64,000 nt of DNA from Schmidtea nova (lineage: Eukaryota), in NCBI GenBank assembly GCA_044892505.1, contig CM097883.1:290346001-290410000 (forward strand), given 5' to 3'. Positions 29,836 through 56,425 of this stretch are shown one piece after another (positions within the stretch are counted from its first letter, which is position 1; every line of letters starts with the position of its first letter). Below the pieces are notes generated by a model. The model saw only the letters and a program-made list of their open reading frames with translations, did no database searches and had not been told where the DNA came from. The position numbers were made by a program, and so were the translations under genes.

Positions 29836-29908
<73 letters not shown>

Positions 29909-32671: not shown

Positions 32672-32706
32672 ATTGGTCAATCTGACCAACTGGATCAGTA
32701 TAAATA
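32672..32706 (+). promoter_or_regulatory. LTR core promoter: reverse CCAAT (ATTGG 32672-32676) + TATAAATA (32699-32706)
   Basis: Same pair with near-identical spacing in the divergent solo LTR (10276-10280, 10302-10309). Confidence 0.7.
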
Positions 32707-33454: not shown

Positions 33455-33610
33455 TGTTAATTGAATAGTTTGGAAAATATTATTTTTATTTCCTCCTTTT
33501 CACATTTTTTTTTGTGTTATTGATCAACGAGCAGAGCACTTTTTATCAGGTCTCGCCAAAATTTACGGATTTATCACAGTAAAATTCTATTAGCATTATT
33601 ATTTTCGCAG

Positions 33611-34111
33611 ATGAAATCAACGATACTGGATGAATTTCTAACAACTCAACGTCATGTGGCACGGGTCGAAAATCCTCTAATCCGGACGCAACGGAAGAAA
33701 TTGAAGTCGCTTCCACAGGAACTCCTCAGAACGCTAAATGCGTTGATGTATAAATGGAGAAGGGAACTAGGAAAGAAATGCCCATTTTCGATTTGGGCCG
33801 GTGGATTGGATACCATCGTATATCGAGGAGGCCCCGGATGGGAAATTCAGGACGAAAGAGACCGGGAGACGACAGCTCTGTTCATCATAGTGGTGTCAGA
33901 CAGCGAAGGAAATCCAACGACAGTGATCCATTGGGGATATGTCTCACCGCTCAAGTTGCTTAAATTCGGGTTGATTCCGAATCACCTACCGAAAACGTGC
34001 CACGGACGCCCCAAACTAAACTGTTCGATGGCTCACATCCGAAGAAATCCAGTCAATCACGGGTTGCATATTACTCCCGTTCACGGCCTCAAGCGAAGTG
34101 TTTTCCACTAA
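33611..34111 (+). CDS. LTR ORF-A, 166 aa, unknown function (5' LTR copy)
   Basis: ATG directly after TTTTCGCAG; GC-richer than flanks; same protein in the 3' LTR. Confidence 0.65.
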   Translation: MKSTILDEFLTTQRHVARVENPLIRTQRKKLKSLPQELLRTLNALMYKWRRELGKKCPFSIWAGGLDTIVYRGGPGWEIQDERDRETTALFIIVVSDSEGNPTTVIHWGYVSPLKLLKFGLIPNHLPKTCHGRPKLNCSMAHIRRNPVNHGLHITPVHGLKRSVFH

Positions 34112-34296
34112 ACATTATATTCACATTTTTATCAACTAAACGATTTCAATAAATTAAATGGTGTTGATCCGTGTTTTTTGTTTGTCCTTAGTTAAATTTA
34201 TTTCTATTTATTTAATCATATGATTTTTACACTCGACGGATAATATTAATCTTGGTAACATGTTTGATGCATTATAAATTGGGTTTGTTATTTAGT

Positions 34297-34887
34297 ATGA
34301 CGGAAACTAGCCAACAGCGAGAATTGGACAAGGCGTGGAGAATCCGCCGAGCATTGGAAAAGGAGCTAAACCAAGAAAAAGCCTTACGAGCCAAAGCAGA
34401 AGCTCAGATTCAGCATTTACGGACCAGCTGGTTCGCACCAGCTCGCATGAAGGAGCAGATGAGTCGGACGAAAAGGGCTCAAAAGACAGCTGACGATTAT
34501 CGCACCGAATGGGAAGCAACAAAAATTGAGTTGCGCCGATGTCTCCATTCGGTGACGACTTCATTTATCGAGTCCGAATTGAAAGCACAAATCCGACCCA
34601 TTACTTACCAGAAATGGGTAGGAGAACAGAAAGTGGCCTGCTCAGTCAGTACGGACACCGATGGACTCGAGGCAACCACAGTGCAGAGTCGGGTGGAAAC
34701 CCCCACTGTACCAAACCCCGTCGGAAGAACGAATAAGTGGAAACGAATCGGCTCCAAGCGCCGTCGCCAAAGAAAGCTGTTTTCTCAACAATTGCAGACA
34801 CAAGTAACCACTATGGCAGAAATGTCGGAGGCCGAGTGGTTATCAGAGATATTCCCTCCAGAAGGAATTTTCAAAGAATTTCTATAA
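34297..34887 (+). CDS. LTR ORF-B, 196 aa, coiled coil + Arg/Lys-rich motif (5' LTR copy)
   Basis: First ATG at 34297 after TTTAG-T; protein-level conservation with 11467-12048. Confidence 0.8.
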   Translation: MTETSQQRELDKAWRIRRALEKELNQEKALRAKAEAQIQHLRTSWFAPARMKEQMSRTKRAQKTADDYRTEWEATKIELRRCLHSVTTSFIESELKAQIRPITYQKWVGEQKVACSVSTDTDGLEATTVQSRVETPTVPNPVGRTNKWKRIGSKRRRQRKLFSQQLQTQVTTMAEMSEAEWLSEIFPPEGIFKEFL

Positions 34888-35382
34888 CAGATAGAATACG
34901 ATGTCCGATTTGGGAGTCAATTAAATCTTTGCTCGTTTTTGTTTTGTTGTTGTTATTTCCTTTGTATTTCTTTCGATTAAATAATTCATATAATTAAATT
35001 TCAATTACCCGTCACACAACGAAAGGAGTAGCGATAAAAAGAACTTGAATATTATCAAATTCGTAGTTTGGTTCTGCTTGTTTGTTTTGTTTTTTTTTTT
35101 TTTGATAAATACATAGCCTCACACACACAAAATAGAACAAGAATTGCGTAAGTCCTTCTACGGCCGCGTGAACCCGTAAGCATAAAGGGGGAGTAGTCCT
35201 AGCAATAGTGCTCACCTGCCCCTCATTGCTTAACCACCCTGCGCATCACCAACTTGGTTATCAAGGGAAATAATCAAGGGCGCTCGAGTGTAGCTTACGA
35301 CTATTTATGCATGATCATGGATGGGAGATCCCTAGCAATCATTAGAATTTTTACCAAACCGTCCATGAACCCAGCATAAATT

Positions 35383-35400
35383 TGGGGGCTCAGCCGGGAT
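35383..35400 (+). promoter_or_regulatory. Primer-binding site, tRNA-Pro type
   Basis: TGGGGGCTCAGCCGGGAT, 18 nt, complementary to a tRNA-Pro 3' end (cf. MLV TGGGGGCTCGTCCGGGAT). Confidence 0.92.
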
Positions 35401-35707
35401 CAACTTCGTTTTATCGGAAAATTGTGAATGCAAAATCTGCAGAGAAGTTTAAAATGCTCGTGTCGTGTGAATAAATTTAATAAAAACAGAAAATTTGTAA
35501 TTAACTCTAAATTATGTACAAAAATAAACAACAAACACAACAGCAAATAAAAGTAAAGTATAAAAATCGAATGCATGCATAAATAATTTGTCGGGACGAC
35601 AATTTTCGGAAACACGGGGAGAGTAAATAAATGCTAAAAGATGCAAAACGAAACATATTACAACGTTAAAATTAAATTCACAAAACGAGACATATTACTA
35701 CTTTAAA

Positions 35708-36801: not shown

Positions 36802-36969
36802 GAGGCCAATGAGCCATATTGAATGACCTAGCTAGGCGTTATGAGAGATTAAATTGAGGCCAATAGAGCCATTTGAGAGATTAAATTGAGGCCAATAGAG
36901 CCATTTGAGAGAATAAAATAAGGCCAATAGAGCCATGTGAGATATAAAATTGAGGCCAAAAGAGCCATA
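36801..36969 (+). repeat. ~32-bp repeat array carrying GGCCAAT boxes
   Basis: GAGAGATTAAATTGAGGCCAATAGAGCCATTT x4 from 36843 plus one partial copy at 36801. Confidence 0.9.
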
Positions 36970-37577
36970 GTGGATTACAGAGATATCCGGATAAATAGTA
37001 ACAGAGGGAATATAGACCCATAGTGTAATCGTCGACGAGATTTAGAATAGTGCGCACTAGTAGTTAAGAAATGCGAGTAAAGCTGATTATGCAACCTTAA
37101 ATAAAGCATGCAAGGAGAATAATAAAAATTCGAGCTGACCGGAGCAACCGACAGAATGAGTAAAACGATTGCTAGCAGGGAATAATGAATAAAGATGATA
37201 AAATAATGATAAACGAGTCAGAAAGACTCAGGGAATTAGAGCGCTCGAGCGACCAATAAATTGGGAAACTGTGGGAAAAGTAATGGATTTGATAAAACAT
37301 AGATAATTATTACGACATAAATAGATAATTGTGACCAGTCTATAGATAATTTAAATAGACTAAAAATAAAGGGGAATCTGGGAAGGGGAAATAATGAAAA
37401 CCCAGTAATAAGTAATCCCGAAAGAAAGGGAATAAAAGCGCGACGATAACAATAAGGTATCGTTGAGGACCTTTGTATTTTAGATATACAAATCAATCAA
37501 ATCAATCAAGCAACAAGAAGAATCAGAAAAACGATAATAGATAGGACAAGAAAATTGATAATATAAAAGTAATCCAG

Positions 37578-40500
37578 TTGAGAAAAGGAGCAAAGAGTGT
37601 CGCAATAAAGCCAACAAAAAAGCAGAAAGCCGGCAAAGATAACCACAAAAACCCACAAGGGAGTAAAGCGAGGAAAATAATAAGAGATAAATCAATTATC
37701 GAAAACGATAAATTGTCAGTAGTAAGCAACAGCTCAAGTAACAAAGAAAACCAAGCGGAACCCAAGGAGAACCAAACAAGCGAAATAGAAAGCGACGAAA
37801 CTAACAACGATAATATCGAAGAAGTAGAAAACGAGGTAGAACCAGAGGTAGAAACCAACGAGAGTGATAACGAAAGTATAATATCAGATAACATAGTAAT
37901 AAGAGAAACTGAAAGCGATTCAAGCTCGAGTGAAACAGAAGACGAACACAACAACGAATTAGAAACAAGAAGAAACGAAAGGAAAATAACTCAAGACAGC
38001 GGAATTGAAATGAGTGAACCAAGAGAAGAAATAAAGGATAAATTCCCAGGAGAACCATTCAACGGAGATGCGAGTAAATTAGAAATTTTTCTAAAGGAAT
38101 TTGGCATATTCGTGGAAGTATGCAAATGGAAAGCTGAGACAACAGCAAGTAGAATACAGTTATATTTGAAAGATAGCGCATTGGACCTATATTTGGAAGC
38201 AAAAAACGGTACCAATCCACCTACAAGCTGGACAGCGATAAAGGATTTTTTCCAACAAACATTTGGAATAAATAAAGTGCTGAGCGAGGCATTCATAGAA
38301 TTCTCAATGAGGAAACAAAAGATGAATGAATCTAATGCGGTATACGCGAGCGAACTGAAAAAATTAGCAAAATCGGTATTCAAGGATGGAGGTCCAATAA
38401 ACGAGGAGTTAATGGCAGCTATCTTCATAGGAGGACTAAGAAGACCCGACATAAGAGCGCAAGTAGGATGTCAAGGATGCAAAACCATAGATCAAGCGTT
38501 AGAAACAGCTAACCGATTTGAATTGCATATGATAGGGAGCGAAGGCAGAATTTATTTAGCCATGGACACAGCGCAAACCGAACCAGAAATAAATCTCAAC
38601 AATCACATTCCAAATTCGCAACAATTAAACCGACCACCCCCTCAACGAAGGAATGAAGGAAATAAAGCGCAGAACTTTGAAAGCCAAAACAATTACAACC
38701 CTCCAAGACAAACAAAACAATGTAAAACATGCGGGAAGTTAGGACACTGGCAGCAAGAATGCTATCAAAATTTGAATTGCGGAAAATGTGGAGTTAAAGG
38801 ACACTCGGAAAGCAGATGTTCTACAATAATCTGTTTTAATTGCGGACGACCTGGTCACTATTCAAGAAATTGCGGACAAAAAAGTAATCAGCGAGGAAAC
38901 TGGCAGAGTAATGGGAACCGACCAAATTACGGAAATCAAGCAAATACCGTAAACCGACCAGATTATGGAAACCAACAAAACAACAATAACAATAATCAGA
39001 ACAAAACCACCCCCAAAGAAATTCATTTGATGCAAGAAGTTCAAAGGTTGACGGAACTCATAAACAATACGACGAGAGGAAATCCGCAAACCAATCAACA
39101 ACAAATTAGCATGATGAGAAAAATAGAAAGCGAAAACGAACGATTGAATCGAGAAAGTAAAGCACGACACGCTCAGGAATGGGCAAGAATACAAAGAGAG
39201 GATGAACAAAAACAGCAAGAAAGAGAACGACAACCTCTAAGAATTAACATGCTAAGAGCAACAAACCAAACAGACACTCGCGAGAAAGAAATCACACTGG
39301 AAATGAATTCGATAGACCCGAATCCAGCCGACAACGAAAGTCGAAAAGAAATAGTACAAAAAGATGAAGAAGTAGAAAAAGAAGCAGAAAAGGGAGTGGA
39401 AACCGAGATAAACCAGGAAGAGAGGAAAGAGATTTGGAAAAAAGGAATGATGGTAATCATGCCCAACGACCATATGTTTCGATTCCAATATAACGCAAAA
39501 GAAGAAGTGAAAGTATTATTCAACAAAGTAAACCAGATGATTCCAGGAGTAACGAAGCTGCCCAGAGAAGCGTTCTTACAAATAGAGGGTGCACCATCAG
39601 TAAAATTGAAATTAACGGATATATGGGAAAACATGGGAGTAGTAGAAACAAAAAGAAATGTGATGAGAATTAAAGAAATAGAACCAGAAGAAATTCCACC
39701 ACCAATACGTCACGAAACCCGAATCCGGCGAATATTTGAAGGAAAAATGATAAGAAGACGTTTAAAAGAGATAGACGAGTTGGGAAAGAAAATGGAAAAA
39801 GTCGAAGTAATAGAGGACAAGAGTGAACCAACACCAGAAATTGACAAAAACGAACCAGAACCAACGGAGAATATACAAGGAGAAACGAACCAAATAGCAC
39901 ATATTAATATGCTAAGAAATACCACCAGAGAGTTTTCCGATGAAGAAGAAGATAGTGACATCAGTAGCCTAGCAGGAGACATATTAAATGAATCCGAAGA
40001 CGAAAATAAAGAAAGAGAAGTAATAAAGACCTCAGAACCTACACAGATAAAAGTAGATGAAATCCAGAAATTACTAGATAACTCGCTAGAAGTAATATAT
40101 AACGAAGAATTCATGGACAAGAAACAACATCGGAAATTCATGAAAGCATTACTACAAATGAACTACAAAGAATGGTTACAAGAACGGGAGGTAGACATGT
40201 TGAATCGATACGTAGGGAAATTAATAGAGGAACCACTCCTCAATTACACCATCTCAATAATAATAAATACATCTACACCAAGAATCTGGATCAAAACTCC
40301 ATTTACAGACGATATCTACAGATGGGTAGAGGATAGACTAGGGAGCTCATACAAAAACAAATTCATCTATTCGCAGAATAGACTCGTAAAGAAAAGAACG
40401 CACTTAGTAGAAACAGGTATATGGCCAGGAGAAATAACTCTGTTATCAATATGCGATGAAAAGGAAGAAGAGAACCTACAAGAAGTTGCAAGGGAGGCAA

Positions 40501-43007
40501 ACACGTGCTTCGAAAGGAGAATAAAACCTCGGTTAGAATACGAGAAAGAACGAGTCTTACGAAAGAATCTGAATTCCCTGATAGAGCAAATCATACCACA
40601 AGTCAAAAAACATAGAAAGGAGTTAATGAGAAGCGAATACGAGAAATTGAAACAATGTATTGAGTGCATACGTGACACAAGTCACACGAGATGGTCACAA
40701 ATCTCACACGACAAATTAATCGCAAAAATGGGAAAAACAATGTTCAGACAAGGGAAAATAACAGACCTAAAAATTTCAGTGGAATTGCCTAATGAAGACA
40801 CCAAAGAAATTGAAGTAGTAGCGGATTGCACCATTAAAGAATTAATAAATGTCATCAACGAGACACTAGTGCAAAGAGAACCAGAAGACGAATGGGAAGA
40901 CGACATAATCATACAATATAACGAACATGTATTATGGGATCACGATGAAAGACGACTATATAAAATCGGTATATGGGATAATCACCAAACCATCCACGTT
41001 ATCAGAATGGACGATACACCCAGAGAAACTGCTAAAGATGAGAAAAGAGAACGGGAACGACGGAAAGAAGTTGTGCGCAAATTACAACAAATAGTAGACA
41101 TCTATCGAAATTGGCGAATTTGGCCAGAGTGGGAAAATGTATTAGAAGAACTCAATCTCAACAGACGAAGACGAACACCCGTAGAAAAACAATGGAACGA
41201 GAAAGGAAAATGTTGGGTACCAAAGGAAGGGGAATATGAAGAAGAATATGAAAGAGGAATGGAAGATGACTGCGAACCAGAAATGAGAAGGGTTTGCATG
41301 GTGACAAGGAAAGCTACGCCAATAGACCTAGATGGACCAGAAACAGCGGCTATATGGGTAGAAAAGGAAAAGCAAAAAACGGAAGAATTTGTCGAAATAT
41401 TAAAAACTAATGCGCACGGTAAGAGAAAAATAATAAAAGGTCTCGCAGATTTTTTCGTGGTTAATGGAGAAGATATAACATGCTTGCGTAAAGTGGCAAA
41501 GGCAATCGCAGAATATAAAAGAGTTAACGAGTGGTGCCCGGAACAACTAGACCACGTAATTAGGAAATGGAGAAATCAGGAATTCTCGCAGGAAATTCCA
41601 CAAAAAGTGCATTTAAGAATAATATATCCAAACAAGGATAAGGAAGAATTGTGGGTAGGAATAGCAGAAAAAATTCGAGATATTAAAAAGAAATTGAGAT
41701 ACGAACCACCATTCCATTTACAACACCAAGGACGATCATTAAATAACAGTTTGGAAATCGGAATAACGCCAGCACAACTAGATCTCATGAATACCTTGAC
41801 AGTAGAAGCAATAGCAGGTCAACCATTGAAACGCAAAGAAGAAAACCATAAACCACACGGAAGTATAAGTACGCCGAGCCCGATGAAATCAGTACTAACA
41901 CCAGGGACAAGTTCAAGACGATCTGAGACAACACCCAGAGGGAATAGAGAAATGACTCCACCACAACCATACGACGTGGACGAAATTTTAACGGATAGCG
42001 ACGATATGATAGAAGAATTAACCGAATTAACAAAAGAAAAAGACGAGAACATTTTCGAAAGAATACAAGAATTACCTACGACAATACAAGTAACCAACAC
42101 CGGAGAAACAGAAGTCGAAGAAGAAATAATAATAGAAGAAATAAACGATTTGATAGAAGACGAAGCGAGAGGGACGAATGTCGAAAATGTACAATTAACC
42201 CAAGAAATGGAAAGATGGTTAGAAGAAAGAGCTAACGAACCAAGAGATGTCACGGAAGAAACAGGACGAGCAACAAGATTTGTGGAAACGGGTACAGGAA
42301 TGGATAGACGACCTCGAGGTAGACCCAAGACAGATCCGGCAAATGTAGTCATCAGAAATAAGGATGAAAAGAGACAAGATCAATGGGAAGTATGTTTAAA
42401 GAAATTAAATAAAATCGCGGAGATAAAAGAAAAAGAGACAACACCAATACGTCAAGGTGAGGAATGGATATCGAAAACAATAATGGAAATATTGGCAATA
42501 ATTGATCCGGAATTGAAAAAATACTGGCGTATAACTGAGATAAGCGAAAAGGCGAAGTCATTGCACAGCGCAATTGCACCCATCTTACCGGAATTCATAA
42601 AAGAAAAGACGAAGTCAAATCATTTAGACTGGCAAGGAACCACTACGTTAATAAAGAAATTGACAGAAGGAGCGGAAACAGATAACAAATACGTGATAGC
42701 CATTGCATACACCATCTACAACCTACTAACACTGAGTAGAGGTCGACCAAAACCCACTGCGTTGGAAAGACACATAAAAAATACCGCAAAAATTATAGCC
42801 AGAGAAATAGAACCATACATCATTAACAAAGGAGGATGGGAAACATTTATAAAAACTAACCAGAAGAAAACACAAGCCAAGAATATGAAAAAAGAAATTC
42901 GAAAAAATATTGGAAGAGTTAGGAAAAGAACAAGCAGGAACAAGAAACGCGAAGTCATCAATGAATTTGAGTTCTATAATAATGATGATGTTGATATGGA
43001 TGATTAG
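37578..43007 (+). CDS. gag: Extended Gag polyprotein (capsid, 3 x CCHC knuckle, 2-3 ubiquitin-like folds, AT-hook, Bcl-2-like C-terminus)
   Basis: PFNGDASKLEIFLKEF..W...IQLYLKDSALDLY capsid motif; CX2CX4HX4C x3 at 38721-38873; frame open from 37545, first ATG at 38010. Confidence 0.9.
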   Translation: MRKGAKSVAIKPTKKQKAGKDNHKNPQGSKARKIIRDKSIIENDKLSVVSNSSSNKENQAEPKENQTSEIESDETNNDNIEEVENEVEPEVETNESDNESIISDNIVIRETESDSSSSETEDEHNNELETRRNERKITQDSGIEMSEPREEIKDKFPGEPFNGDASKLEIFLKEFGIFVEVCKWKAETTASRIQLYLKDSALDLYLEAKNGTNPPTSWTAIKDFFQQTFGINKVLSEAFIEFSMRKQKMNESNAVYASELKKLAKSVFKDGGPINEELMAAIFIGGLRRPDIRAQVGCQGCKTIDQALETANRFELHMIGSEGRIYLAMDTAQTEPEINLNNHIPNSQQLNRPPPQRRNEGNKAQNFESQNNYNPPRQTKQCKTCGKLGHWQQECYQNLNCGKCGVKGHSESRCSTIICFNCGRPGHYSRNCGQKSNQRGNWQSNGNRPNYGNQANTVNRPDYGNQQNNNNNNQNKTTPKEIHLMQEVQRLTELINNTTRGNPQTNQQQISMMRKIESENERLNRESKARHAQEWARIQREDEQKQQERERQPLRINMLRATNQTDTREKEITLEMNSIDPNPADNESRKEIVQKDEEVEKEAEKGVETEINQEERKEIWKKGMMVIMPNDHMFRFQYNAKEEVKVLFNKVNQMIPGVTKLPREAFLQIEGAPSVKLKLTDIWENMGVVETKRNVMRIKEIEPEEIPPPIRHETRIRRIFEGKMIRRRLKEIDELGKKMEKVEVIEDKSEPTPEIDKNEPEPTENIQGETNQIAHINMLRNTTREFSDEEEDSDISSLAGDILNESEDENKEREVIKTSEPTQIKVDEIQKLLDNSLEVIYNEEFMDKKQHRKFMKALLQMNYKEWLQEREVDMLNRYVGKLIEEPLLNYTISIIINTSTPRIWIKTPFTDDIYRWVEDRLGSSYKNKFIYSQNRLVKKRTHLVETGIWPGEITLLSICDEKEEENLQEVAREANTCFERRIKPRLEYEKERVLRKNLNSLIEQIIPQVKKHRKELMRSEYEKLKQCIECIRDTSHTRWSQISHDKLIAKMGKTMFRQGKITDLKISVELPNEDTKEIEVVADCTIKELINVINETLVQREPEDEWEDDIIIQYNEHVLWDHDERRLYKIGIWDNHQTIHVIRMDDTPRETAKDEKRERERRKEVVRKLQQIVDIYRNWRIWPEWENVLEELNLNRRRRTPVEKQWNEKGKCWVPKEGEYEEEYERGMEDDCEPEMRRVCMVTRKATPIDLDGPETAAIWVEKEKQKTEEFVEILKTNAHGKRKIIKGLADFFVVNGEDITCLRKVAKAIAEYKRVNEWCPEQLDHVIRKWRNQEFSQEIPQKVHLRIIYPNKDKEELWVGIAEKIRDIKKKLRYEPPFHLQHQGRSLNNSLEIGITPAQLDLMNTLTVEAIAGQPLKRKEENHKPHGSISTPSPMKSVLTPGTSSRRSETTPRGNREMTPPQPYDVDEILTDSDDMIEELTELTKEKDENIFERIQELPTTIQVTNTGETEVEEEIIIEEINDLIEDEARGTNVENVQLTQEMERWLEERANEPRDVTEETGRATRFVETGTGMDRRPRGRPKTDPANVVIRNKDEKRQDQWEVCLKKLNKIAEIKEKETTPIRQGEEWISKTIMEILAIIDPELKKYWRITEISEKAKSLHSAIAPILPEFIKEKTKSNHLDWQGTTTLIKKLTEGAETDNKYVIAIAYTIYNLLTLSRGRPKPTALERHIKNTAKIIAREIEPYIINKGGWETFIKTNQKKTQAKNMKKEIRKNIGRVRKRTSRNKKREVINEFEFYNNDDVDMDD

Positions 43008-46000
43008 CACCGATAGCGCAACAGCGTTCGAAGTGTTTGATTGCGACCAAATGAAGTTAGGAGAAAAGTATTCATTGAGAGGCACGGAGCAATGCAAAGA
43101 TGCAACTCCAGTAGAGTTGCAAAAGATTAAAAAGGAACAATGGTACCACGTGTATCAAGAAGCAGAACTCATAAAGACAATGGTGAATGAATGTAAGGTG
43201 CAGAAGACGAGATTCGCATTCTACTGCGGGAGAGGACATTATTCAGCAATTGTCATGCCAGGAACGGAAAGAGAACCAATCGTGTTACAAGGAGAGGACT
43301 GCGAAGCACTGTTTAAACATGGAGAAGTAACAACAAGAGATAAAATCAAGATAAAAGGAAAGCCAGGAATGATGATGCAACAGACGTACTATGTAGCAGG
43401 ACGGATTACGGGAGGAGAAGGATATTGTCAAGGAGAAACCTACCCGATGTTCGGAACACTCGCAACCAACTTAGTGGTGATGGATACGTATATAGTCGAA
43501 CTAAAAAGCTATGAAGCATTCTTCGAACCCACAACGGGAGAAATGAAAACGTTATCCATGTGTAAAATCGACAGGACCATGTGTCAAACGGGAATGTCAA
43601 CATTAGTGTACAAACCAAAGGTGAACGAATGTCAATTACAACTGCTACAAGGAGCAAAGTTCGACGAAATCCAAGGAAAAACGTTCCAGGAAGAAGACGA
43701 TGACGACAAAGCTAGAGCAAAGCATCTCAAGGAAGCTTTAGAGAATAAAAGACAACTGAAACCAGATCATAGAGAAAAACGGATAGAGATGAGAGCCACA
43801 CCAACAGTGTTGATAACCACAAATCAGGATGTGGGAATGAGGTTCATAAAAGGGAAAGCAACCCTTAAGTGTAGTACAACGGTATACGAAACGAATTATC
43901 CAGGAATATATGTGTCAAAACAAGAAGTGCCAAATGCGAAACCCAAAATCGACACAATGGATATCAAACTACACCTATATGTGAATAATAAAATGGATTT
44001 CCTATTCCATAGAGGACAAGCCTCATTACAAAAAGTGTACTACGATCTGATAAACAATGATTGTATATTGAATCGAGAAATATTAAAGACAAAGTTGGCC
44101 GTAGCAATTACGAATCCAGATAGCGCGATGCCATTATTACCACTGAGAGAAGGACATTTCGGAAGAGTGGTTGGAGAAGCAATGTATGTATACATTTGTG
44201 AAAAGACACACGCATCGCTAGCAGCAACAACACAGTTGAAACCTGGAACCTGTACAAATGAGTTAGAAATCGACTACAAAGGAAAAGTACGATACGTTCA
44301 ACCAGTGACGAGAATCATCAATCCACCAGGGTTTGAACCAAATCCATTCAACTGTAGTAATGCGTATGGACCACTTTATCAGAAACCAGATGGTAAATGG
44401 GTTATGTTCCCAGGAAGATCCGAAGTGATAGCACCAAGAGAATTCGAGCTAATGCAGTTGTCAAAGGATAGGCAATTCAGCGACGTAGATGTCTCAAACA
44501 ACGGAATATATAGTCCAAAGGATTTAGAAGCAGCAAGGCAGAATATATTATTTCCAGCGAGAAGAGAAGCATTACTGTCAAATATCGTAACGATAACGGG
44601 AGGAACGGATTATCGAGAAGGACCGAATTACGAACTGTTGTTGTCACCAGCACATTTCAAGAAAGCCACGGAAAATATGATGAAAGCCATGTGGGGAAGA
44701 TTCCTGATATTTGGACAAATGATGGCGGGAATACTGGGGGTCATATTAATAATCCAAATCGTCAGAGTAATAATAACGCAAATGTTAGCGTGTTTCGATA
44801 TATACAAGAGGGAAAAGAAAGTGAATTGGAAAATGGTAGTAGGGTTTTTACCATTCCTTGCGAAAACAATGGTGTTGCATGGACACTCAAAAGATATCCA
44901 CCGAATAAAAAGACTCCTAAAGATACTAGCAAAAATGAAGGGAACAGATGAAGAAGTAGGACGAAAATTTAAAAAGATAATGAATGACGAACAAGCAAGA
45001 CAACAGCTCAAGAGAGAAAGAAAAGGTTTATGGGAGAGGGTGAAAGGATATAAAACCCAAAATGATTCGAGCGACGACGATGATGACGACGACGACTATA
45101 AGGGAGGACAAGTGTACAAGAACCAAGCACCACGATACATCGAAAAGAATCCAGCCGACGCATGGAAATGTTACGCACCTCCGCCAACAATGTATCAAGA
45201 ACCACTACAAGGAGAAAAAAATAGCACGATGCAAATGATGCCAATGACAAATGTATACCCCATGATACCAGAAGATTATAAAATGAGAAGATGTAGAAGT
45301 GTAGATCCACAAGGAGACGCACATACAATCGCCGTAATGTCATCAAACACAGGTCCAGTACTAACCACGACAATAGAGATTAACGGAAGAGAAATCGAAG
45401 CAATGATCGACACTGGAGCAAACATTTCCGCCATCGACATCAAATGGATACCACAGGAGCAAAGACGAGAAATAGAAAGGACAAACGTCCATGTAATTGC
45501 ATGTAGCAAAGAAGTTGTAGAAGTAGCAGGAAGATGGTGGGTAAAAATACGCCACTTAAATACAGAAATCGATACGTACGTAGCAGTCATACCAGCATTA
45601 AGCGTACCTTGCATTATCGGAACAGATTTGATGCCAGCGTTATTTAAAGAAATCGTAATCGATCTCGGAACAATGAGATTAAAGGATCGCACCGGACAAA
45701 TATGCGCAATAGAAGCCAAAGTAACGAGTTCAAAGCAAATGATAATACCGGCAAGAAAGGAAAAAATATGTTACGTAAAAATAGATCCGACAATCCAAGG
45801 CGATATGATTTTCGAACCAAGTAAGAGATTCGAGAAAAGAAAAGCGTTGCCAATGGCAAGAGGACTAGTCAACATAAACAATAATGGGGAAATCCCAATA
45901 AACGTAGTAAATTTCGACGAGGAGGACAAGATAATATACGAAAACGAAAGATTAGGTAAATTAACCCCAATGATGGATATCGAACTACCAATAGCAGGGG

Positions 46001-49000
46001 CAGAGAAAGATAAAGAACCAACCTGGAATATTGATAGTGAATTATTAAATGAGGATCAAAGGAAGCAGCTAGAAAAACTCCTGATAGAGTATAAGGATAT
46101 ATTTGCAGCATCCGATTTAGATCTAGGAACATGTGATGTCACGTTACATACGATACCATTAACCGACGAAACACCAATTGCATTAAGACCATACAAATTA
46201 GCAGAAGCACAGAAAGCAGTAGCGGAAGCAGAAGTGAAGAAAATGTTGGATGCAGAAGTAATCGAACCAAGTTGTTCACCCTGGCAATTTCCAGTAGTAA
46301 TGGTAAAGAAGAAAGACGGAACACAGAGATTCTGCATAGATTATCGAAGATTGAATACAGTGACAAAACGAGATACTTACCCATTACCAGACATCAACGA
46401 AATGCTACTAACATTACAGGGAGCAGCATATTTTACATCGCTAGATCTGAAAAGCGGATACTGGCAAATAAAAATGAAGGAAGAAGATAAAGAGAAAACT
46501 GCCTTTACCATCGGTAGAGACCTATATCAATTTCGAAAGATGCCCTTTGGATTAACAAACGCACCAGCATCATTTCAGAGATGCATGAATTTCGTCACCC
46601 ATGGAATAAAGCAGTGTATGGTCTACATCGACGATTTATTAATCTACTCTAGCACGTTTGAACAGCACATACAGGATATTCGAGATGTATTCGTTAGACT
46701 TAGACAATGGAAGTTAAAACTCAAGCCATCCAAGTGTGATTGGGCGAAAGAGAAAGTAACATTTTTAGGACATATAGTGTCAGCAAAAGGAAAAGAACCG
46801 GATCCTAGAAATATCGACAAAGTAAAGGAATGTCCAGTACCAAAAACAATAACCCAGATACAAGAATTTCTTGGACTATGTGGATATTATAGAAAGTTTA
46901 TAAAAGATTACGCCGGAATAGCAAAACCTATACAGGAACTAGTAAAGAAAGATGTATCCTTCATATGCGGAGACGAACAACAAACAGCTTTCGAGACATT
47001 AAGAGATAAACTGATAACCGCACCCATATTGGTACACCCAGACTTCAAGAAGCCATTCTTACTTGAAACAGACGCAAGCGGATATGCAGCAGGAGCAGTA
47101 TTAGGACAATACGACGATGAAGGAAAAGAACGCGTAATCGGATATTATAGCCGGACATTCAAAAAGCATGAGAAAAATTACTCAGTAACCGAGCGAGAAG
47201 CGTTAGCAATCATACTAGCAATTAAACACTTTAAATATTTATTATGGGGACACATCATCTGTATAACCACAGATCACCAACCGCTTGTGTGGTTAGGACA
47301 ACATAAGGAAACCTCCAGTAGATTAATGCGATGGGCAATGCAGCTACAGGAGTACTCACCAGACATAAAATTTAAATCAGGACGAGCGAATGCGAATGCA
47401 GACTGTATGTCCAGACTGACATTTCCGGAATTAACCGACCCGGATGTACAACGAATTTGTGTATTAATAGCAGAAGATTTAGATTTTAGTGAGTTAAAGA
47501 AAGATCAACAGGAAGACAGAGAGTTAGGACAGATCATAGAGTTCCTAACATCTCGAAATATGGAGGTATTCAAAGATAATAAAGAATTAAAGGAACATAT
47601 AGGAAAATATCAACATCGATATATAATAAATAAAGGATGGTTATTGATACAAGACGGTGAAAAGAGGCTGATGTGTTTACCGGAAAACAGAAGGAAAGAG
47701 ATAATGATCCAATACCACGATGGGAAATTAGGAGGTCATATGTCAGAGAAAAAGACAATAAATCGGATGAGACAGAAATATTATTGGCGAACAATGGAAG
47801 AAGATATAAAAGAATGGATTAAAAATTGCCTAACCTGCGCAACTAGAAAGGATAGTGGGAAGAAATGGAAGAACCCGCTACAACCAATGCCGATACCAGC
47901 AGAGCCAATGACAACTATAGCAATGGACGTAATAGGACCATTACCAGAAAGTTTAAACGGAAATATTTATATATTGGTAATAACGGATTATCTGACGAAA
48001 TTCCCGGAAGCATTTGCCATGCAAGATCAAAAAGCAAAAACCGTAGCAAAAATTTTGGTAGAAGAAATATGTTGCAGATACGGAACTCCAAAACAAATAC
48101 TCACAGACCAAGGAACTAATTTTATGAGCGAGCTATTGAACGAGGTAACAAACTATTTCAGAATAGCAAAATTGAGAACTTCACCATATCACCCGCAAAC
48201 GAATGGACAAACGGAGCGATTCAATGGTACATTGATCAGAATGTTATCAAATTACGTCAGCAGACATCAGACTGATTGGGACGAATATATAAAATTATGT
48301 TTAATGGCATACCGAATGTCGATACATGCAGCAACAAAACTAAGCCCATTTCAACTTATGTATGGAAGAGAATGCAACATGCCCATAGATTTAGAGTATC
48401 AACCACCATTATCGCAATATATGGAAGACGACGACTACATAACCAAATTCAAAGAAAGGATGCAGGAAATATGGAAAACGGCAGAACTCAACATTAAATT
48501 TTATCAGGAAAGTTATAAGGATTTACACGACCAGAAGAAAAATGTTAAAGCGAACGACCTAAAACCAGGAGATTGGGTGATAATAGAAACTCCCGAAATA
48601 ATACCAGGAACTGTTAAGAAACTCCAAAGACCTGGAAGAGGACCTTATGAAATTATATACAAAAAGGACAACAATGTCAAAGTTAAGCTAATAAATCGAC
48701 CGTTAATACGACCCATATATGTAAACACCTGCAGATGTAAGAAGGTGCCTAAAACGATAACTACAACACCAGAGAATCGAATAATAACCAGATCACAAAC
48801 AGCCAGGATAAATATGCTCAGAGCTAACGCAACTGAAGACGACAAAGCAGAAATAAGGCAAAAGGAAATCAGAAATAAAGAAATCATATTGAAGGCGAGA
48901 GAGATAATGGGAAGATGGCATGTTAGAGACGAAGCAGGCATATCAAGGGATATTAGACATATAATTAGCCGTTACGCACAAGGATTACCAACCGAACCAA

Positions 49001-52000
49001 TTATTTCTGAATTATTGGAAAAAATCCCTGAAATACTCTTATTGAAAGATGTAGGAGGACAACCAGCCTTACATAATGCGATAGAGTGTAAAAACATTGA
49101 AAGAGCAAAAGAATTCCTAAAAATCGCAAAAGAAACAAACCAAAACTTGGACGTAGGGAATCGGGAACAAGAAACTCCATTAATGACAGCCGCAATCCAC
49201 CAAGCAGATAAAGAAATGATAGAGCTATTGATAAAAGCCAATTTCAGTTGGACAGAACGAGATAGAGAAGACAAAACAGTCTTAAGTCACGTAATATGGA
49301 GTTCACACAAACTAATGCTGAAACATATAATCGCAAACGCCACATGGGAAATAGACGAATTAATAAAAGGAGACATTATCAAAGAAGCAATCAAAATTGG
49401 GAAATGCGACACGATCCGTAAGTTGATCAAATGGAAACGACCAGAAGAGGATACATGGGTCTTAGACATAAACGAAGTATACAGCGAAGGACAAAACGCG
49501 CTGTTAAGATATCTTCTGAAATTTACTTGTGATCAGAAGACATTACTAACTTTATTAGACAGAGGAAACATAAACATCACAAAAAATGAAGAAGAATACA
49601 AATTCGATAAAGAAAAGGAGGCCTTATTCAACAAGATTAGGAAATGGTGTGCGAAACCACTTGATAAGTTAATAACCTACAAAGACATAAACAATTTTAA
49701 CGAGAAATACCAGATGATAGTAAGTGAGTATGAGGAATTAGTTAAAATCTTAAACCATCCCGAAAAATGCAAACAGGTTTTAGAGAAAAAAGAAAGAGAA
49801 AGTAACAAGAAACTCACACCACTCTTTAAAGCAGAAGCACCATACCAAGCTAGACTAGATGCGATACAAGAAAAAGCAAAAGAACTGTTACCGGAATTCG
49901 AAAATAGTAAACATGCACTGGAAATACTCGGCGCATTAGTTGAAAAAGTACACGCATACGCAAAAGGAACATACAATGGTAACGACATAACAACTATAAA
50001 AAAGGAGATGCCAGTAACATTTTTACTACCAAAGGACGGAATAATGCCCATACATAGAGCTTTACGAAATGGCAAAGATAGAAAAGTAATGGAAATTGCA
50101 CGAATAATGCTAAACTGCGGAAGCAACATGAATATGGTAGACGAGAAAGGAGATACACTCATGATATTTGCAGCAAGGGCCAAAACGAAAACAAAAGTGT
50201 TGGAAGAACTATACAAAGCAGGTGCAGGACTTACAGGAAAAACAGATAAAGATAATTCAATTCTGGATGTAGCATTACTAACACATAATTGGGAAATGGT
50301 CAACTTCATTAAAACAATCTCAAATCAGGAAGAAATAGATTACCTAACTGATACGGTCAGGAAACCCAGTGTACTAACAATGATGCATAATGTCGAACTA
50401 ACAGAAGCAATACTTACGTGGATAAATCCGAATACTAACGAACCAGCATTCAGGATTAATGAGTTTACAGAACATAACCAAAATTGGTGCATAAGAAGTG
50501 CCTTAATAACGTATAAATGGCCAGAGATATTGAAGATGTTTATGGAAAGAAAGGATCTAAGGATCACAACCAGCCCGAAGGAAGAAAAGTACACAGGCAA
50601 ATGGAAAGAATTGATGAAGACATACATCAACAATTGGATCAAGGCCAAAAAGGAAATCTTAGAATATAAATCCACTAACAAAGTAATACCAGAACAGGTA
50701 GAAACACAAGAGTTTGAGGCAAGTAATCTAACGACATTAGCGTATGCGAAACTAATAGAAGAAATCAATGTCGAGGACGACATTTTCGACGAGCCAGGGG
50801 GAGATGACAATACAGATAGTGACGACGGTAACAACTCAGAAAATTCAAACGATCACGAACCACCCGATAAAGAGGAAAACGAGAGAAAAGACAAGAAACG
50901 AGACAAGGAAGAAAAGAAAAGTAAAGACGAAAAACAAAGAGATGAAGAGGGAGAACAAGGAAAAAACGACCAAGGAGATAAAAATGACACCCAAAGAACA
51001 GGTTATAAATCAACCATAAAACCATTCTTCAAACCAGAATTACTATTATTAACAGTGATTTTAACGTTAATTAACCCAAGTCAAGGAATGACATGTGAAG
51101 AAAGGGCAATAATACAAATAAAAAACGCGAAAGGAATCGAACGAGTATGTTGGTCAAAAAAGGACAAAATCACGGAACAAAATAGTCCGATGGATTGCAG
51201 AATCTCAAAACACGAGCAAGAGATCATAGAGATCAATGACCTAGATCTAAATACCTGGTACAAAATATGCACCATTAGAAAACAAAAGCATCCAAGATCA
51301 CACAACACAATCGCATGTGCAAAATACCAAACACCTAAAGCAGCCATGACAATACAACAGTCACCCAAAGGAGATTACATCCTCGGAAAATGTGGAAGAA
51401 CAGAGACACAGGGAACAGAAAACAAAAAACCCCAGGCAACAGATAAGCAAACAACACCAACCCTACGAATTACAATAGAGAGGCCTGAAGCAAGAGTTGC
51501 CACAAACGAAACCGAAAGAGTGTCCTACCAAATGGAAGTATTATGTTTAGCACTCATACTAATAATGATAAAACGATTAGAGGAAGGAATAGAAATTGAA
51601 ACTATGACAATAACAGAAGTAGAAGATACACAGAATACTAACATAAAATGTTGGGCGAGGAATAACGAGGAAATCGGCGTAAACGAAATAAGGAAAAGTC
51701 GAAAACTAACAACGAATAAAGTAATTAAAATATCCGAAGTAAAAGCAGATAAGACGTACAAACTATGCCTACTAGAAAAAGAAACGAACAAGAAAGGTAC
51801 CACAAAATGTAAAACATTTCAACCTGGAGAGGTAATAAAGTTCAGAAGGAGAACGAGGAAGAGAAATAAACAAATCAAGCGGAAAGTAAACATAACATTA
51901 GAAATAAAAGAGATAGAACCAAATGTGAAAGGAGTATGCTGGAGGAAGTACGAAAAAGAAGTAAATAAAAGAACGACACCACAATGTCGAACAAACACAG

Positions 52001-55048: not shown

Positions 55049-56425
55049 ATGGACAGAGAAGAACGAACAATCGAAATCTTGAGATTAGAAAACAGAAAAT
55101 GGAGCAAGAGGCTCACATGCGGGAAGTGTAACAATTTATTACGAGAACCTAGACAAACGATATGTGGATGTAGAATATGTACAAAATGTATACAAGAATT
55201 AGATGCAACAGGAATAACAACATGCCCAGAATGTAAAGAAGGAAGAATAGTGTTGGACGAAACCAGAACGGATAAAGCAACCCAGAGAGAAATTATGAGC
55301 ACCATAACGGAGTGCGTAAATACACCTTGTACATGGCAAGGACAAATAAGCAATCTAGAAAATCACATGGAAAATTGCGAAGAGAAAAGAGCCGAATGCG
55401 AGAAGTGTCAACAGATAATAATACTAAAAAAGAAAGAACAACACAAGGACGAATGTAAAGAAGAAGAAATCGCATGCAAGTATTGTGAAACTCGAGAGAC
55501 AAGGAGAAGAATCGAAGAAGAACACTTAAATATAACAGAGGAGAAAATATGCGGACAATATGTAAGCAAATGTCCAAACAATTGCGAAATAACAGAAGAA
55601 ATAAAGTTACATGAACATTGGAAAATATGCACCGAAAGGCCAAGAGAATGTCCATATAACAAGCATGGATGCAAGGAAAAGCGGACGCGAAAAACAATGA
55701 AACAACACCTAGAAGAAGCAGCACTAACGCATGTGGAAATGACAAACGAAACGACAAAAGAAACGGAACAGACAATCCAGAAATTAGAAAAAGAAGTAGA
55801 ATCACATAAGATAATGATGAGTTTACTATTAGAAACAAGAGAGCAGTTTGAACTAACTCGCAAAAGAATGGAAGAGAAAATAATAGCCATAGCAGAATTA
55901 GGAAAAGGAATGAAAATACAATATAATCAATTAATACGAGAAATTGACGAAAGAAGGGACTTACCAATCGCACCTTACCTATGGAAAGTAACAGATTTCA
56001 GAGACAAACTAGCAGAAGCCAGAAATATGACGAAAACAGCAGTAATAAGCCCACCATTTTATTTATGGAAAAATGGGGTTAAAATAAGATTGAAAGTATA
56101 CCCAAATGGAGACGGAAGAGGACAAGGAACACACGTGTCAATATTTTTCTCGCTATGTAAAGGAGAATACGATGACCTAATAGAATGGCCCTTGAAAGTA
56201 GGAGTCATTATAAGAATCAGGAGTGTGGGAAAACCAGTAGAAAAGTTCTTTGAAACAGACAAACATACGAGTACGAGCGAAAAACCAACGACAGAATGCG
56301 GACTAGCAGCAGGAGAACCAATGTTTATAAGGAAAGAAAACCTATGGGAACGACTATATGCAGACACGCTATACATAGAGATGGAGAGGCATGAGAAAAC
56401 GGATAAAAAAGGATGGTTGGCGTAA
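55049..56425 (+). CDS. TRAF: TRAF-family protein (RING, TRAF zinc fingers, coiled coil, MATH), intronless, 458 aa
   Basis: CGKCNNLL.EP.QT.CGCR.C..C RING; five Zn-finger-like repeats; YLWKVTDF, ISPPFY, KVYPNGDGRGQGTHVSIFF.LCKGEYDDL.EWP MATH motifs. Confidence 0.95.
   Translation: MDREERTIEILRLENRKWSKRLTCGKCNNLLREPRQTICGCRICTKCIQELDATGITTCPECKEGRIVLDETRTDKATQREIMSTITECVNTPCTWQGQISNLENHMENCEEKRAECEKCQQIIILKKKEQHKDECKEEEIACKYCETRETRRRIEEEHLNITEEKICGQYVSKCPNNCEITEEIKLHEHWKICTERPRECPYNKHGCKEKRTRKTMKQHLEEAALTHVEMTNETTKETEQTIQKLEKEVESHKIMMSLLLETREQFELTRKRMEEKIIAIAELGKGMKIQYNQLIREIDERRDLPIAPYLWKVTDFRDKLAEARNMTKTAVISPPFYLWKNGVKIRLKVYPNGDGRGQGTHVSIFFSLCKGEYDDLIEWPLKVGVIIRIRSVGKPVEKFFETDKHTSTSEKPTTECGLAAGEPMFIRKENLWERLYADTLYIEMERHEKTDKKGWLA

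What the first reader, a model, noticed from the sequence alone, without database searches (positions are those of the whole stretch)
42961..48800. gag / env-pol order: a chuvirus-like fusogen fused in frame to the N-terminus of Pol
Signal peptide, FDC..YSL..C, ECKV.KTRF.FYCG..HYS, YETNYP.IYV, LYVNNKMDF, GEAMYVYIC, CTNEL.I, GIYSPKDL..ARQNILFP and a TM match the chuvirus/gB-like class III glycoproteins found in some BEL/Pao elements; a furin-type REKR lies at 43771. Here it precedes the protease with no stop, while gag is in another frame. Topology would leave PR-RT-RH-IN as the cytoplasmic tail of Env, so Pol could be packaged through the envelope protein instead of a Gag-Pol fusion. I know of no precedent for this strategy.
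Basis: partly seen in the sequence, partly recalled or inferred. Interest (0 to 1): 0.95.

Follow-up and report, generated by a model that had tools for sequence, protein, structure and literature searches.

The report
Giant retroelement with in-frame env-pol
A young 29-kb virus-like retrotransposon reads a membrane-fusion gene of chuvirus type in one piece with its protease, reverse transcriptase and integrase; the layout is real, but it was already described for planarian 'Burro' elements and later for gag-env-pol elements of nematodes, bryozoans and flatworms.

Summary
Window 42961-54474 is one stop-free ORF. It encodes a signal peptide, a class III fusogen (Pfam PF24664, E 1.8e-70), a transmembrane segment, then PR, RT, RNase H and IN. 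An AlphaFold model (pLDDT 87.8) matches chuvirus-type glycoproteins and herpesvirus gB.

The ORF does not stop at 48800. It runs on through ankyrin repeats and two paralogous FN3-repeat membrane modules.

Gag (ORF1, three CCHC knuckles) ends at 43007 in another frame, and ORF2 lies +1 to it.

The whole is a Ty3/gypsy element, not BEL/Pao. It is about 29.2 kb long, with 3-kb LTRs that are 99.8% identical, and it also carries TRAF/MATH and coiled-coil ORFs.

The gag-env-pol order is conserved in at least 15 distant lineages. In 11 of them env continues into PR or RT in the same ORF. In 9 Gag lies upstream in the same ORF.

The claim of 'no precedent' fails. Arkhipova & Yushenova 2019 described in-frame env between gag and pol in planarian Burro elements. 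An eLife 2026 paper reports GAG-ENV-POL elements in Nematoda, Bryozoa and Platyhelminthes, citing Sacco 2022 for nematodes.

The REKR site is not conserved.

Pol as the cytosolic continuation of Env remains a plausible, untested mechanism. In single-ORF relatives the primary product is Gag-Env-Pol.

The parts
32321..35376 (+). 5' LTR, starting TG. The end is inferred at a CA six bases before a PBS-like TGG.
   Evidence: 32320-35363 aligns with 58457-61500: 3044 nt, 6 mismatches, no gaps. The end is inferred from the sequence read.
35383..35401 (+). PBS-like sequence (TGG followed by about 16 nt that look complementary to a tRNA 3' end). Inferred only.
   Evidence: Sequence read. No tRNA gene in the window to compare with.
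36810..37000 (+). Five tandem 32-nt units in the 2.2-kb leader.
38010..43007 (+). ORF1, gag plus a long extension. Coordinates run from the first in-frame ATG; the frame is open from 37545 and the mechanical TTG start is 37578. The capsid-like region is homologous to the N-terminus of relatives. The three CCHC knuckles lie at 38721-38873.
42889..43007 (+). Overlap of the ORF1 frame and the ORF2 frame. ORF2 is +1 relative to ORF1.
42961..54474 (+). ORF2: Env-PR-RT-RH-IN-ankyrin-two membrane modules, with no stop.
42961..43026 (+). Signal peptide of Env (22 aa). It aligns with the N-terminal signal of stand-alone chuvirus-type glycoproteins and with an internal hydrophobic segment of the single-ORF relatives.
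43027..44700 (+). Env ectodomain, a class III (gB-like, chuvirus-type) fusogen with 14 Cys, most at near-invariant alignment columns.
   Evidence: Pfam PF24664 E 1.8e-70. AF2 model pLDDT 87.8. Foldseek: gB E 1e-13; Tacheng tick virus 4 glycoprotein E 1e-36, TM 0.61. Profile vs PDB: 37 of 38 hits are gB. Near-invariant Cys.
43771..43782 (+). REKR, a furin-type motif in a window-specific, low-confidence loop. Not conserved.
44701..44805 (+). Env transmembrane segment (aa 598-632 of ORF2).
   Evidence: Conserved in relatives.
44806..45366 (+). Cytosolic linker between the TM and PR. The membrane-proximal part is conserved. One copy of the recurrent four-residue motif lies at 45328, just before PR.
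45367..45639 (+). Aspartic protease (RVP).
46303..46779 (+). Reverse transcriptase (RVT_1).
46972..47355 (+). RNase H (RT_RNaseH, RT_RNaseH_2).
47680..48249 (+). Integrase (Integrase_H2C2, rve).
49009..49311 (+). Ankyrin repeats.
51016..52809 (+). Module A: signal-like segment, four FN3-like repeats, TM.
53023..54471 (+). Module B, a paralogue of module A: signal-like segment, three FN3-like repeats, TM, tail.
55049..56425 (+). ORF3, TRAF-like (zf-TRAF plus MATH).
56539..57600 (+). ORF4, coiled-coil protein.
58458..61500 (+). 3' LTR. Its last bases and any target-site duplication fall in the N run 61501-61757, which was left as it is.

Best explanation
This is a young, apparently intact giant Ty3/gypsy endogenous-retrovirus-like element of the Burro kind. 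It is about 29.2 kb long with 3.06-kb LTRs. A class III fusion glycoprotein of chuvirus (Jingchuvirales) type sits between gag and pol and is read in one frame with PR-RT-RH-IN.

Proposed mechanism; all of it is inferred, none of it is shown. The Env signal sequence takes the nascent chain to the ER. The ectodomain folds in the lumen with its conserved disulfides, and the TM stops transfer. PR-RT-RH-IN and the ankyrin region are then made on the cytosolic face as the continuation of the Env tail. Two further signal-like/TM pairs thread two FN3-repeat modules into the lumen. The element's protease then cuts the polyprotein, probably at a recurrent four-residue motif that also lies just before PR and just after IN.

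Env and Pol would therefore be made in equal numbers and at the same membrane. In single-ORF relatives Gag is the N-terminal part of the same polyprotein, so the signal sequence is internal. In this copy gag and env-pol differ by one frame change (+1). ORF2 is therefore reached by a shift of frame during expression, by its own ATG on a processed mRNA, or not at all if the change is a mutation or an assembly error in this copy.
For: Anatomy of the element.

Fusogen identity:
- Pfam PF24664, E 1.8e-70.
- 937 homologues. The second tier consists of stand-alone proteins of about 650 aa, including a named chuvirus glycoprotein.
- AF2 model, pLDDT 87.8.
- Foldseek against BFVD: the top hits are chu-like virus glycoproteins, E 1e-36, TM about 0.6.
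- Foldseek against PDB: the top 50 hits are all herpesvirus gB, E 1e-13 to 1e-11.
- Profile against PDB sequences: 37 of 38 hits are gB.

Conservation of the layout:
- Of 15 long relatives (all under 50% identical to the window's Env, 27-39%), 11 continue from Env into PR or RT in one ORF. Nine have CCHC or Gag upstream of Env in the same ORF, and seven have both.
- Window Gag aa 153-328 aligns with P0001 aa 91-260 (E 1e-9).
- The Env signal aligns with an internal hydrophobic segment in single-ORF relatives and with the N-termini of free viral glycoproteins.

Topology:
- Signal-like and TM segments alternate. The signal-like segments of modules A and B have basic N-flanks and their TMs have basic C-flanks.
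- Twelve near-invariant Cys lie in the ectodomain.

Frame and age:
- The ORF2 frame is open for 24 codons upstream of its ATG. Only 5% of runs in that off-frame are that long.
- LTRs are 99.8% identical.

Literature: Burro, in-frame env between gag and pol, with MATH_TRAF_C, ankyrin and three CCHC (PMC6431247). BURRO1 is transcribed and called active (PMC8532177).
Against: - There are no RNA or protein data for this element.
- Signal peptidase cleavage, topology and protease sites are inferred from hydropathy and motifs only.
- Gag and env-pol are not in the same frame here, and I recognised no established frameshift signal.
- An ATG sits exactly at the signal peptide, which fits independent translation just as well.
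- A splice that removes env cannot be excluded.
- Some related contigs have the genes split: L007 into two ORFs and L004 into at least six. These may be decayed copies or error-prone assemblies.
- BIR, BCL2-like and dUTPase domains reported for Burro-1 were not found.
- No Burro reference sequence was available for comparison.
Confidence: 0.6

Rival explanations
1. Env-Pol is translated on its own, from the ATG at 42961 on a spliced subgenomic mRNA. Gag is made separately, and Pol reaches particles only as the cytoplasmic tail of Env, with no Gag-containing fusion at all.
For: - The first ATG of ORF2 opens the signal peptide directly.
- Gag has its own stop 47 nt later.
- L003 and L005 also have env-pol ORFs starting with their own ATG.
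- No known +1 shift signal was recognised in the overlap.
Against: - Nine related lineages carry Gag and Env in one ORF.
- The ORF2 frame is open for 24 codons upstream of the ATG, which is unusual for that off-frame (5% of runs).
- There is no splice evidence.
- In L003 the Env signal lies about 140 aa inside the ORF, so an N-terminal signal is not a family rule.
Confidence: 0.2
2. The in-frame fusion is only formal. The main Pol mRNA splices env out and gives a conventional Gag-Pol. Env is made from another transcript and ends functionally at its tail.
For: Retroviruses and errantiviruses use splicing for env. The 2.2-kb leader holds 38 ATGs, and ORF1 lacks an ATG for its first 155 open codons. 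Both features hint at RNA processing.
Against: If env were removed from the Pol mRNA, nothing would keep Env and PR in one frame without a stop. Yet 11 of 15 lineages, at only 27-39% Env identity to the window, keep the junction open. The membrane-proximal tail is conserved.
Confidence: 0.12
3. The split between gag and env-pol is not a design feature. It is a single frame change in this copy, or an assembly error, in a family whose normal state is one gag-env-pol ORF as in Burro-1 and in L001/L002.
For: Single-ORF relatives. Burro-1 is described with one 4873-aa ORF. Six LTR mismatches show that some change has occurred since insertion.
Against: Everything else in 23 kb of coding sequence is open. 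L003 also has gag and env-pol in different frames, there in the -1 relation. One copy cannot decide the question.
Confidence: 0.35

Closest known systems
Burro (GYPSM1) giant gypsy-like LTR retrotransposons of planarians (Grohme et al. 2018; Arkhipova & Yushenova 2019, PMC6431247)
   Same: - Giant size, about 30 kb with LTRs.
- Ty3/gypsy Pol.
- Gag with three CCHC knuckles.
- env homologous to mononegavirus-type fusion glycoproteins, placed in frame between gag and PR.
- Ankyrin repeats and a MATH_TRAF_C domain.
- Tandem repeats in the non-coding part.
- AT-rich host DNA.
   Different: - Burro-1 is described with one 4873-aa ORF. Here gag (ORF1) and env-pol (ORF2) are in different frames.
- MATH/TRAF is a separate ORF downstream of pol.
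- BIR, BCL2-like, SUMO-like and dUTPase domains were not detected by Pfam.
- Two FN3-repeat membrane modules at the end of ORF2 are not mentioned for Burro.
- Sequence identity to Burro could not be tested, and the host was not identified.
GAG-ENV-POL 'errantiviruses' with HSV/gB-type ENV in Nematoda, Bryozoa and Platyhelminthes (eLife 2026, PMC13524379); nematode NERVs (Sacco et al. 2022, known to me only through that citation and from memory)
   Same: Ty3/gypsy Pol, a gB-type class III Env of RNA-virus origin, and env placed between gag and pol.
   Different: - That survey capped LTR-to-LTR distance at 14 kb, so elements of this size were outside its net.
- It does not discuss in-frame fusion, frameshifts or topology.
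- From memory, not verified: NERVs are described as one continuous gag-env-pro-pol ORF.
Mosquito BEL/Pao elements with captured chuvirus glycoprotein (Dezordi et al. 2020, PMC7642597)
   Same: The same glycoprotein family captured by an LTR retroelement.
   Different: A different retroelement superfamily. According to the literature, env there is an added gene rather than an in-frame part of the polyprotein. The window has no BEL/Pao signature domains.
Jingchuvirales (chuvirus) glycoproteins and herpesvirus gB
   Same: The same Pfam family (PF24664) and the same fold. Best structural matches: chu-like virus G, E 1e-36, TM about 0.6; gB, E 1e-13.
   Different: Those are free-standing proteins of about 650 aa (chuvirus) or part of a DNA-virus entry complex (gB). 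Here the TM is followed by more than 3200 further residues in the same ORF.
Membrane-threaded polyproteins of flaviviruses and alphaviruses (analogy of mechanism only, from general knowledge)
   Same: Internal signal and stop-transfer segments alternate, so that structural glycoproteins face the lumen and enzymes face the cytosol within one translation product.
   Different: No homology and a different replication strategy. The processing proteases here are inferred, not shown.

Membership tests
Ty3/gypsy (Metaviridae) LTR retroelement | Two long terminal direct repeats flanking the coding region | tested here: met
   3044 nt aligned, 6 mismatches.
Ty3/gypsy (Metaviridae) LTR retroelement | Domain order PR-RT-RNase H-IN, with Ty3/gypsy-type RNase H and an H2C2 integrase zinc domain | tested here: met
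   RVP, RVT_1, RT_RNaseH/RT_RNaseH_2, Integrase_H2C2 and rve, in that order.
Ty3/gypsy (Metaviridae) LTR retroelement | TG...CA termini, PBS next to the 5' LTR, target-site duplication | tested here: inconclusive
   A 5' TG and a PBS-like TGG are seen. The 3' end and any duplication lie in the N run 61501-61757, which was left unfilled.
BEL/Pao (Belpaoviridae) | BEL/Pao-type protease and Gag-associated domains (Peptidase_A17, DUF1758/1759) | tested here: not met
   No such Pfam hit at E up to 0.01 on whole ORFs or 0.5 on pieces.
Class III viral fusogen, Monjiviricetes/Jingchuvirales type | Sequence membership in PF24664 above the curated cut-off | tested here: met
   238 bits against a cut-off of 27.
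Class III viral fusogen, Monjiviricetes/Jingchuvirales type | gB/G-like multidomain fold with a central helix | tested here: met
   AF2 pLDDT 87.8. Foldseek probability 1.0 to chu-like G and to gB. The profile matches the gB segment 477-550 (chain numbering).
Class III viral fusogen, Monjiviricetes/Jingchuvirales type | Type-I layout: signal peptide, disulfide-rich ectodomain, single C-terminal TM | tested here: met
   Hydropathy. Twelve near-invariant Cys.
Class III viral fusogen, Monjiviricetes/Jingchuvirales type | Bipartite hydrophobic fusion loops; trimer; membrane-fusion activity | not tested
   Fusion loops were not inspected. Activity is not testable with these tools.
Burro giant gypsy-like elements | Giant size (internal region up to about 25 kb, total about 30 kb) | tested here: met
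   Internal region 23.1 kb, total about 29.2 kb.
Burro giant gypsy-like elements | env in frame with PR-RT-RH-IN, downstream of gag | tested here: met
Burro giant gypsy-like elements | gag in the same ORF as env-pol (single giant ORF1) | tested here: not met
   One frame change (+1) separates ORF1 from ORF2 in this copy.
Burro giant gypsy-like elements | Accessory domains: three CCHC knuckles, MATH_TRAF_C, ankyrin | tested here: met
Burro giant gypsy-like elements | Accessory domains BIR, BCL2-like, SUMO-like, dUTPase (as in Burro-1) | tested here: not met
   Not found by Pfam. More sensitive profile comparison was not available.
Burro giant gypsy-like elements | Planarian (Dugesiidae) host; sequence similarity to Burro references | not testable with these tools
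   The host is identified only as a metazoan: the PSMA6 exon has best hits of 60-63%. No Burro sequence is held by any tool.
GAG-ENV-POL errantivirus-like elements / NERV | gB-type env located between gag and pol of a Ty3/gypsy element | tested here: met
   against the definition given in PMC13524379.

The most novel reading that the evidence does not exclude
In this lineage Pol is not brought into particles by Gag. It arrives as the cytosolic continuation of a class III fusogen within a membrane-threaded polyprotein that also delivers two FN3-repeat surface proteins. That would be a retroelement using a flavivirus-like polyprotein topology. As far as I could find, no held paper states or tests this mechanism.
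Probability: 0.3. Interest if true: 0.7.

Novelty: new member of a known kind. Interest (0 to 1): 0.35.

Why it matters
The layout shows that an LTR retroelement can absorb a fusion glycoprotein from an RNA virus into its own polyprotein instead of adding it as a separate gene. That forces Pol to be made at a membrane.

This bears on how retrotransposons become enveloped viruses. It also bears on how Gag:Pol:Env ratios are set without a classical Gag-Pol, and on how a 29-kb RNA is handled by a retroelement.

The order itself is already published. What remains open, and can be tested by description alone, is how the env-pol ORF is expressed and processed. The C-terminal FN3-repeat membrane modules appear to be unreported.

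Tried and rejected
- Single-sequence phmmer of Env against PDB sequences gave only noise. The profile and the fold search were needed.
- Rfam and tRNA scans of the window found nothing.
- Exact look-ups of ORF3 and ORF4 found no other copy.
- The JGI metagenome scan with Env-PR found no relative.
- Module A has no detectable homologues.
- blastp self-comparison missed the module A/B duplication, which phmmer found.
- Sacco et al. 2022 and the eLife supplements are not held.
- Troyka is unrelated.
- The host could not be named from the PSMA6 exon.
- BEL/Pao membership was rejected on domain content.
- The furin site as a family feature was rejected.
- I saw no canonical slippery heptamer in the short gag/env-pol overlap of L003 and no established +1 signal in the window's overlap. 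I draw no conclusion from either.

No place or change is given in notes, scripts or this report.

Consensus lines printed by the alignment tool were not used.
Full report
**What is there**

The window holds a complete LTR element. Positions 32320-35363 and 58457-61500 align over 3044 nt with 6 mismatches and no gaps. The 3' copy then runs into the N stretch 61501-61757, which I left as it is. Beyond it there is no further similarity.

From the 5' copy the LTR probably ends at a CA at 35375-35376, six bases before a PBS-like TGG at 35383. That end is an inference. It gives LTRs of about 3.06 kb, an internal region of about 23.1 kb and a total of about 29.2 kb.

The coding strand is strongly A-rich, with AT skew of 0.3-0.5 from 36 to 58 kb. 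Four ORFs lie between the LTRs, all on the + strand:

| ORF | Coordinates | Size |
|---|---|---|
| ORF1 | to 43007 | 1809 codons from the mechanical TTG start at 37578 |
| ORF2 | 42910/42961-54474 | 3854 codons |
| ORF3 | 55049-56425 | 458 aa |
| ORF4 | 56539-57600 | 353 aa |

**Check of the observation**

ORF2 has no stop in 3854 codons. Off-frame stop-free runs in the same DNA average 8-17 codons.

Pfam places these domains along the one protein:
- PF24664 Monjiviricetes_fusion (E 1.8e-70)
- RVP (aa 820-910)
- RVT_1 (1132-1290)
- RT_RNaseH (1378-1482)
- Integrase_H2C2 and rve (1591-1762)
- ankyrin repeats (2034-2134)

The first ATG of the frame (42961) opens a 22-residue signal-like segment. 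A strong hydrophobic segment lies at aa 598-632.

ORF1 carries three CCHC knuckles. Its aa 153-328 are homologous to the N-terminal region of related polyproteins (E 1e-9), so it is gag. It ends at 43007 in another frame, and ORF2 is +1 to it. The overlap is 119 nt from where the ORF2 frame opens.

- The ORF runs 5.7 kb beyond the stated end of 48800.
- The Pol is of Ty3/gypsy type. No BEL/Pao signature domain was found.

**The N-terminal domain is a chuvirus-type class III fusogen**

A full scan of 1.84 billion representative proteins gave 937 hits. Below a first tier of long polyproteins comes a tier of stand-alone proteins of about 650 aa at 20-26% identity. These include a protein named as the putative glycoprotein of a chuvirus and insect endogenous copies named 'Glycoprotein'.

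A 92-sequence alignment shows twelve near-invariant cysteines. The AlphaFold model built on it has a mean pLDDT of 87.8.

- Foldseek against predicted viral structures puts chu-like virus glycoproteins first. Tacheng tick virus 4 scores E 1e-36 with TM 0.61, and several others have TM of about 0.6.
- Against solved structures, the first 50 hits are all herpesvirus gB (E 1e-13 to 1e-11, probability 1.0). TM is only 0.31-0.38, as expected for a multidomain protein caught in different conformations.
- The alignment profile against PDB sequences returns gB in 37 of 38 hits, best E 0.0016.

The REKR motif lies in a window-specific loop of low confidence (pLDDT 54-68). It is absent from the aligned loop of all 10 close relatives and all 81 stand-alone glycoproteins. 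I treat it as unsupported.

**The layout is conserved, not an accident of this copy**

I mapped the window's own domains onto the long hits. Fifteen representative proteins carry Env, each under 50% identical to the window's Env (27-39%).

| Feature | Number of the 15 |
|---|---|
| Env continues into PR and/or RT in the same ORF | 11 |
| CCHC or Gag homology upstream of Env in the same ORF | 9 |
| Both | 7 |

RT identity to the window is 46-62%.

- Contigs L001 and L002 carry one ORF of 4029 and 3771 aa. Its order is CCHC, Env, PR, RT, RH, IN, then further protease-like and membrane segments. Nothing is open upstream of it.
- L003 has gag and a 4844-aa env-pol ORF in different frames, there in the -1 relation with a 40-nt overlap.
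- L007 has gag-env-PR and PR-RT-RH-IN as two ORFs.
- L004 has the same order split into at least six ORFs. It is a decayed copy or an error-prone assembly.

In the single-ORF relatives, the segment that aligns with the window's signal peptide is an internal hydrophobic stretch preceded by basic residues. In free viral glycoproteins the same position is the N-terminus.

**Precedent**

The claim of 'no precedent' does not hold.

- Arkhipova and Yushenova (2019, PMC6431247) describe the giant gypsy-like Burro elements of planarians. These exceed 30 kb and have Gag with three CCHC knuckles, MATH_TRAF_C and ankyrin repeats. Their env region hits mononegavirus fusion glycoproteins and lies between gag and PR. 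[quoted passage not shown]
- An eLife 2026 paper (PMC13524379, preprint 2023) reports Ty3/gypsy elements with HSV/gB-type ENV in the order GAG-ENV-POL in Nematoda, Bryozoa and Platyhelminthes. It cites Sacco et al. 2022 for nematode elements. That paper is not held. My recollection that it describes a continuous gag-env-pro-pol ORF is from memory.
- BURRO1 is transcribed and is called highly abundant and active (PMC8532177).

The window's element matches Burro in these respects:
- size
- Pol type
- three CCHC knuckles
- env position
- ankyrin repeats
- a MATH/TRAF domain
- leader tandem repeats
- AT-rich host DNA

It differs in these respects:
- gag is in a separate frame.
- MATH/TRAF is a downstream ORF.
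- No BIR, BCL2-like or dUTPase domain was detected by Pfam.
- It has two C-terminal membrane modules.

I could not compare it with a Burro sequence or name the host. A proteasome alpha-6 exon in the flank has best hits of only 60-63% in assorted animals. Exact look-ups of ORF3 and ORF4 found nothing.

**How it most likely works (inferred)**

ORF2 reads as a membrane-threaded polyprotein:
1. Signal, then lumenal Env ectodomain with conserved disulfides, then TM.
2. A cytosolic stretch with PR-RT-RH-IN and the ankyrin region.
3. A signal-like segment with a basic N-flank, four lumenal FN3-like repeats, and a TM with a basic C-flank.
4. A short cytosolic stretch.
5. A second signal-like segment, three FN3-like repeats, a TM and a tail.

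The repeat model has pLDDT 83.8, and its Foldseek hits are fibronectin type III domains at TM 0.5-0.6 and E 0.01-0.1, which is weak but consistent.

The orientation alternates as the positive-inside rule expects. It puts all enzymes in the cytosol and all cysteine-rich, glycosylation-site-bearing modules in the lumen.

A four-residue motif of the form [IV][NA][MV][LM] occurs only four times in the two ORFs: twice in the gag extension, once just before PR and once just after IN. The copy before PR is shared with L002. I read these as candidate protease sites, which would free Pol from the Env tail.

Under this reading Env and Pol are made in equal numbers at the same membrane. In the single-ORF relatives Gag is the N-terminal part of the same product.

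**What cannot be decided here**

How ORF2 is reached in this copy is open. There is one frame change (+1) between gag and env-pol. Three readings are possible:
- A shift during expression. The ORF2 frame is open for 24 codons upstream of its ATG, a length reached by only 5% of runs in that off-frame.
- A mutation or assembly error in a family whose normal state is one ORF.

A splice that removes env to give a conventional Gag-Pol is also not excluded. It would, however, leave unexplained why distant lineages keep Env and PR in one open frame.

**Verdict**

The feature is real and well formed, and the element looks young and intact. The arrangement belongs to a kind described since 2019, so the novelty is that of a new member.

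The membrane-tethered-Pol mechanism and the FN3-repeat modules are the parts worth a further, purely descriptive, look.

Noticed in passing
window 48997-54471: ORF2 continues about 2000 aa past integrase. It has ankyrin repeats, then two paralogous modules (phmmer 1e-43). Each module has a signal-like segment, four or three FN3-like repeats with an invariant C-W...C...C pattern, a TM and a basic tail. No homologues were found in the protein collection, and the modules are not mentioned for Burro in the review I read.
   Followed up: partly
window 55049-56425 and 56539-57600: Two further ORFs lie inside the element: a TRAF-like protein (zf-TRAF plus MATH, E 5e-21) and a coiled-coil protein. They look like captured host genes.
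   Followed up: partly
window 39243, 39903, 45328, 48808: A four-residue motif [IV][NA][MV][LM] occurs only four times in ORF1 and ORF2. Two copies lie inside the gag extension, one just before PR and one just after IN. They are candidate protease cleavage sites.
   Followed up: partly
window 35377-38010: The leader is 2.2 kb long and holds 38 ATGs. The ORF1 frame is open for 155 codons before its first ATG at 38010, which sits just upstream of the Gag homology. Five 32-nt tandem units lie at 36810-37000. These features hint at RNA processing or unusual initiation.
   Followed up: no
window 28000-32300: Immediately upstream of the element lies a block of several tandem-repeat families, with units of about 93, 96, 128, 132-139 and 153 nt.
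   Followed up: no
window 11259-12552: Two stretches are 72-78% similar to parts of the element's LTR (to 33377-33458 and 35146-35335). This is probably a remnant of a related LTR. It overlaps a 198-aa ORF at 11452-12048.
   Followed up: no
window 14966-15379 (-): A 137-aa exon of a proteasome alpha-6 subunit has best hits of only 60-63% in assorted animals (a mussel, a schistosome, insects). The host has no close relative in the protein collection.
   Followed up: partly
window 3976-9757 and 22045-23049 (-): Several long ORFs lie in the flank. One is a 729-aa protein with hydrophobic segments. Others looked to me like transposase-derived proteins. None was tested.
   Followed up: no
L001, L002, L003, L005 (downstream of pol); P0009: Relatives carry different accessory genes from the window: RNase_T-type exonuclease ORFs, a RING finger ORF, and second or third aspartic-protease domains in the polyprotein. 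One relative (HBK71150.1) is filed in NCBI as a hypothetical protein of a Flavobacteriaceae MAG, which looks like a mis-binned eukaryotic contig.
   Followed up: no
L002 2-53 and 16741-16792: A 52-nt direct repeat (88% identical) lies at the two ends of a 16.8-kb contig holding a single gag-env-pol ORF. The contig may therefore span one element from LTR edge to LTR edge.
   Followed up: no
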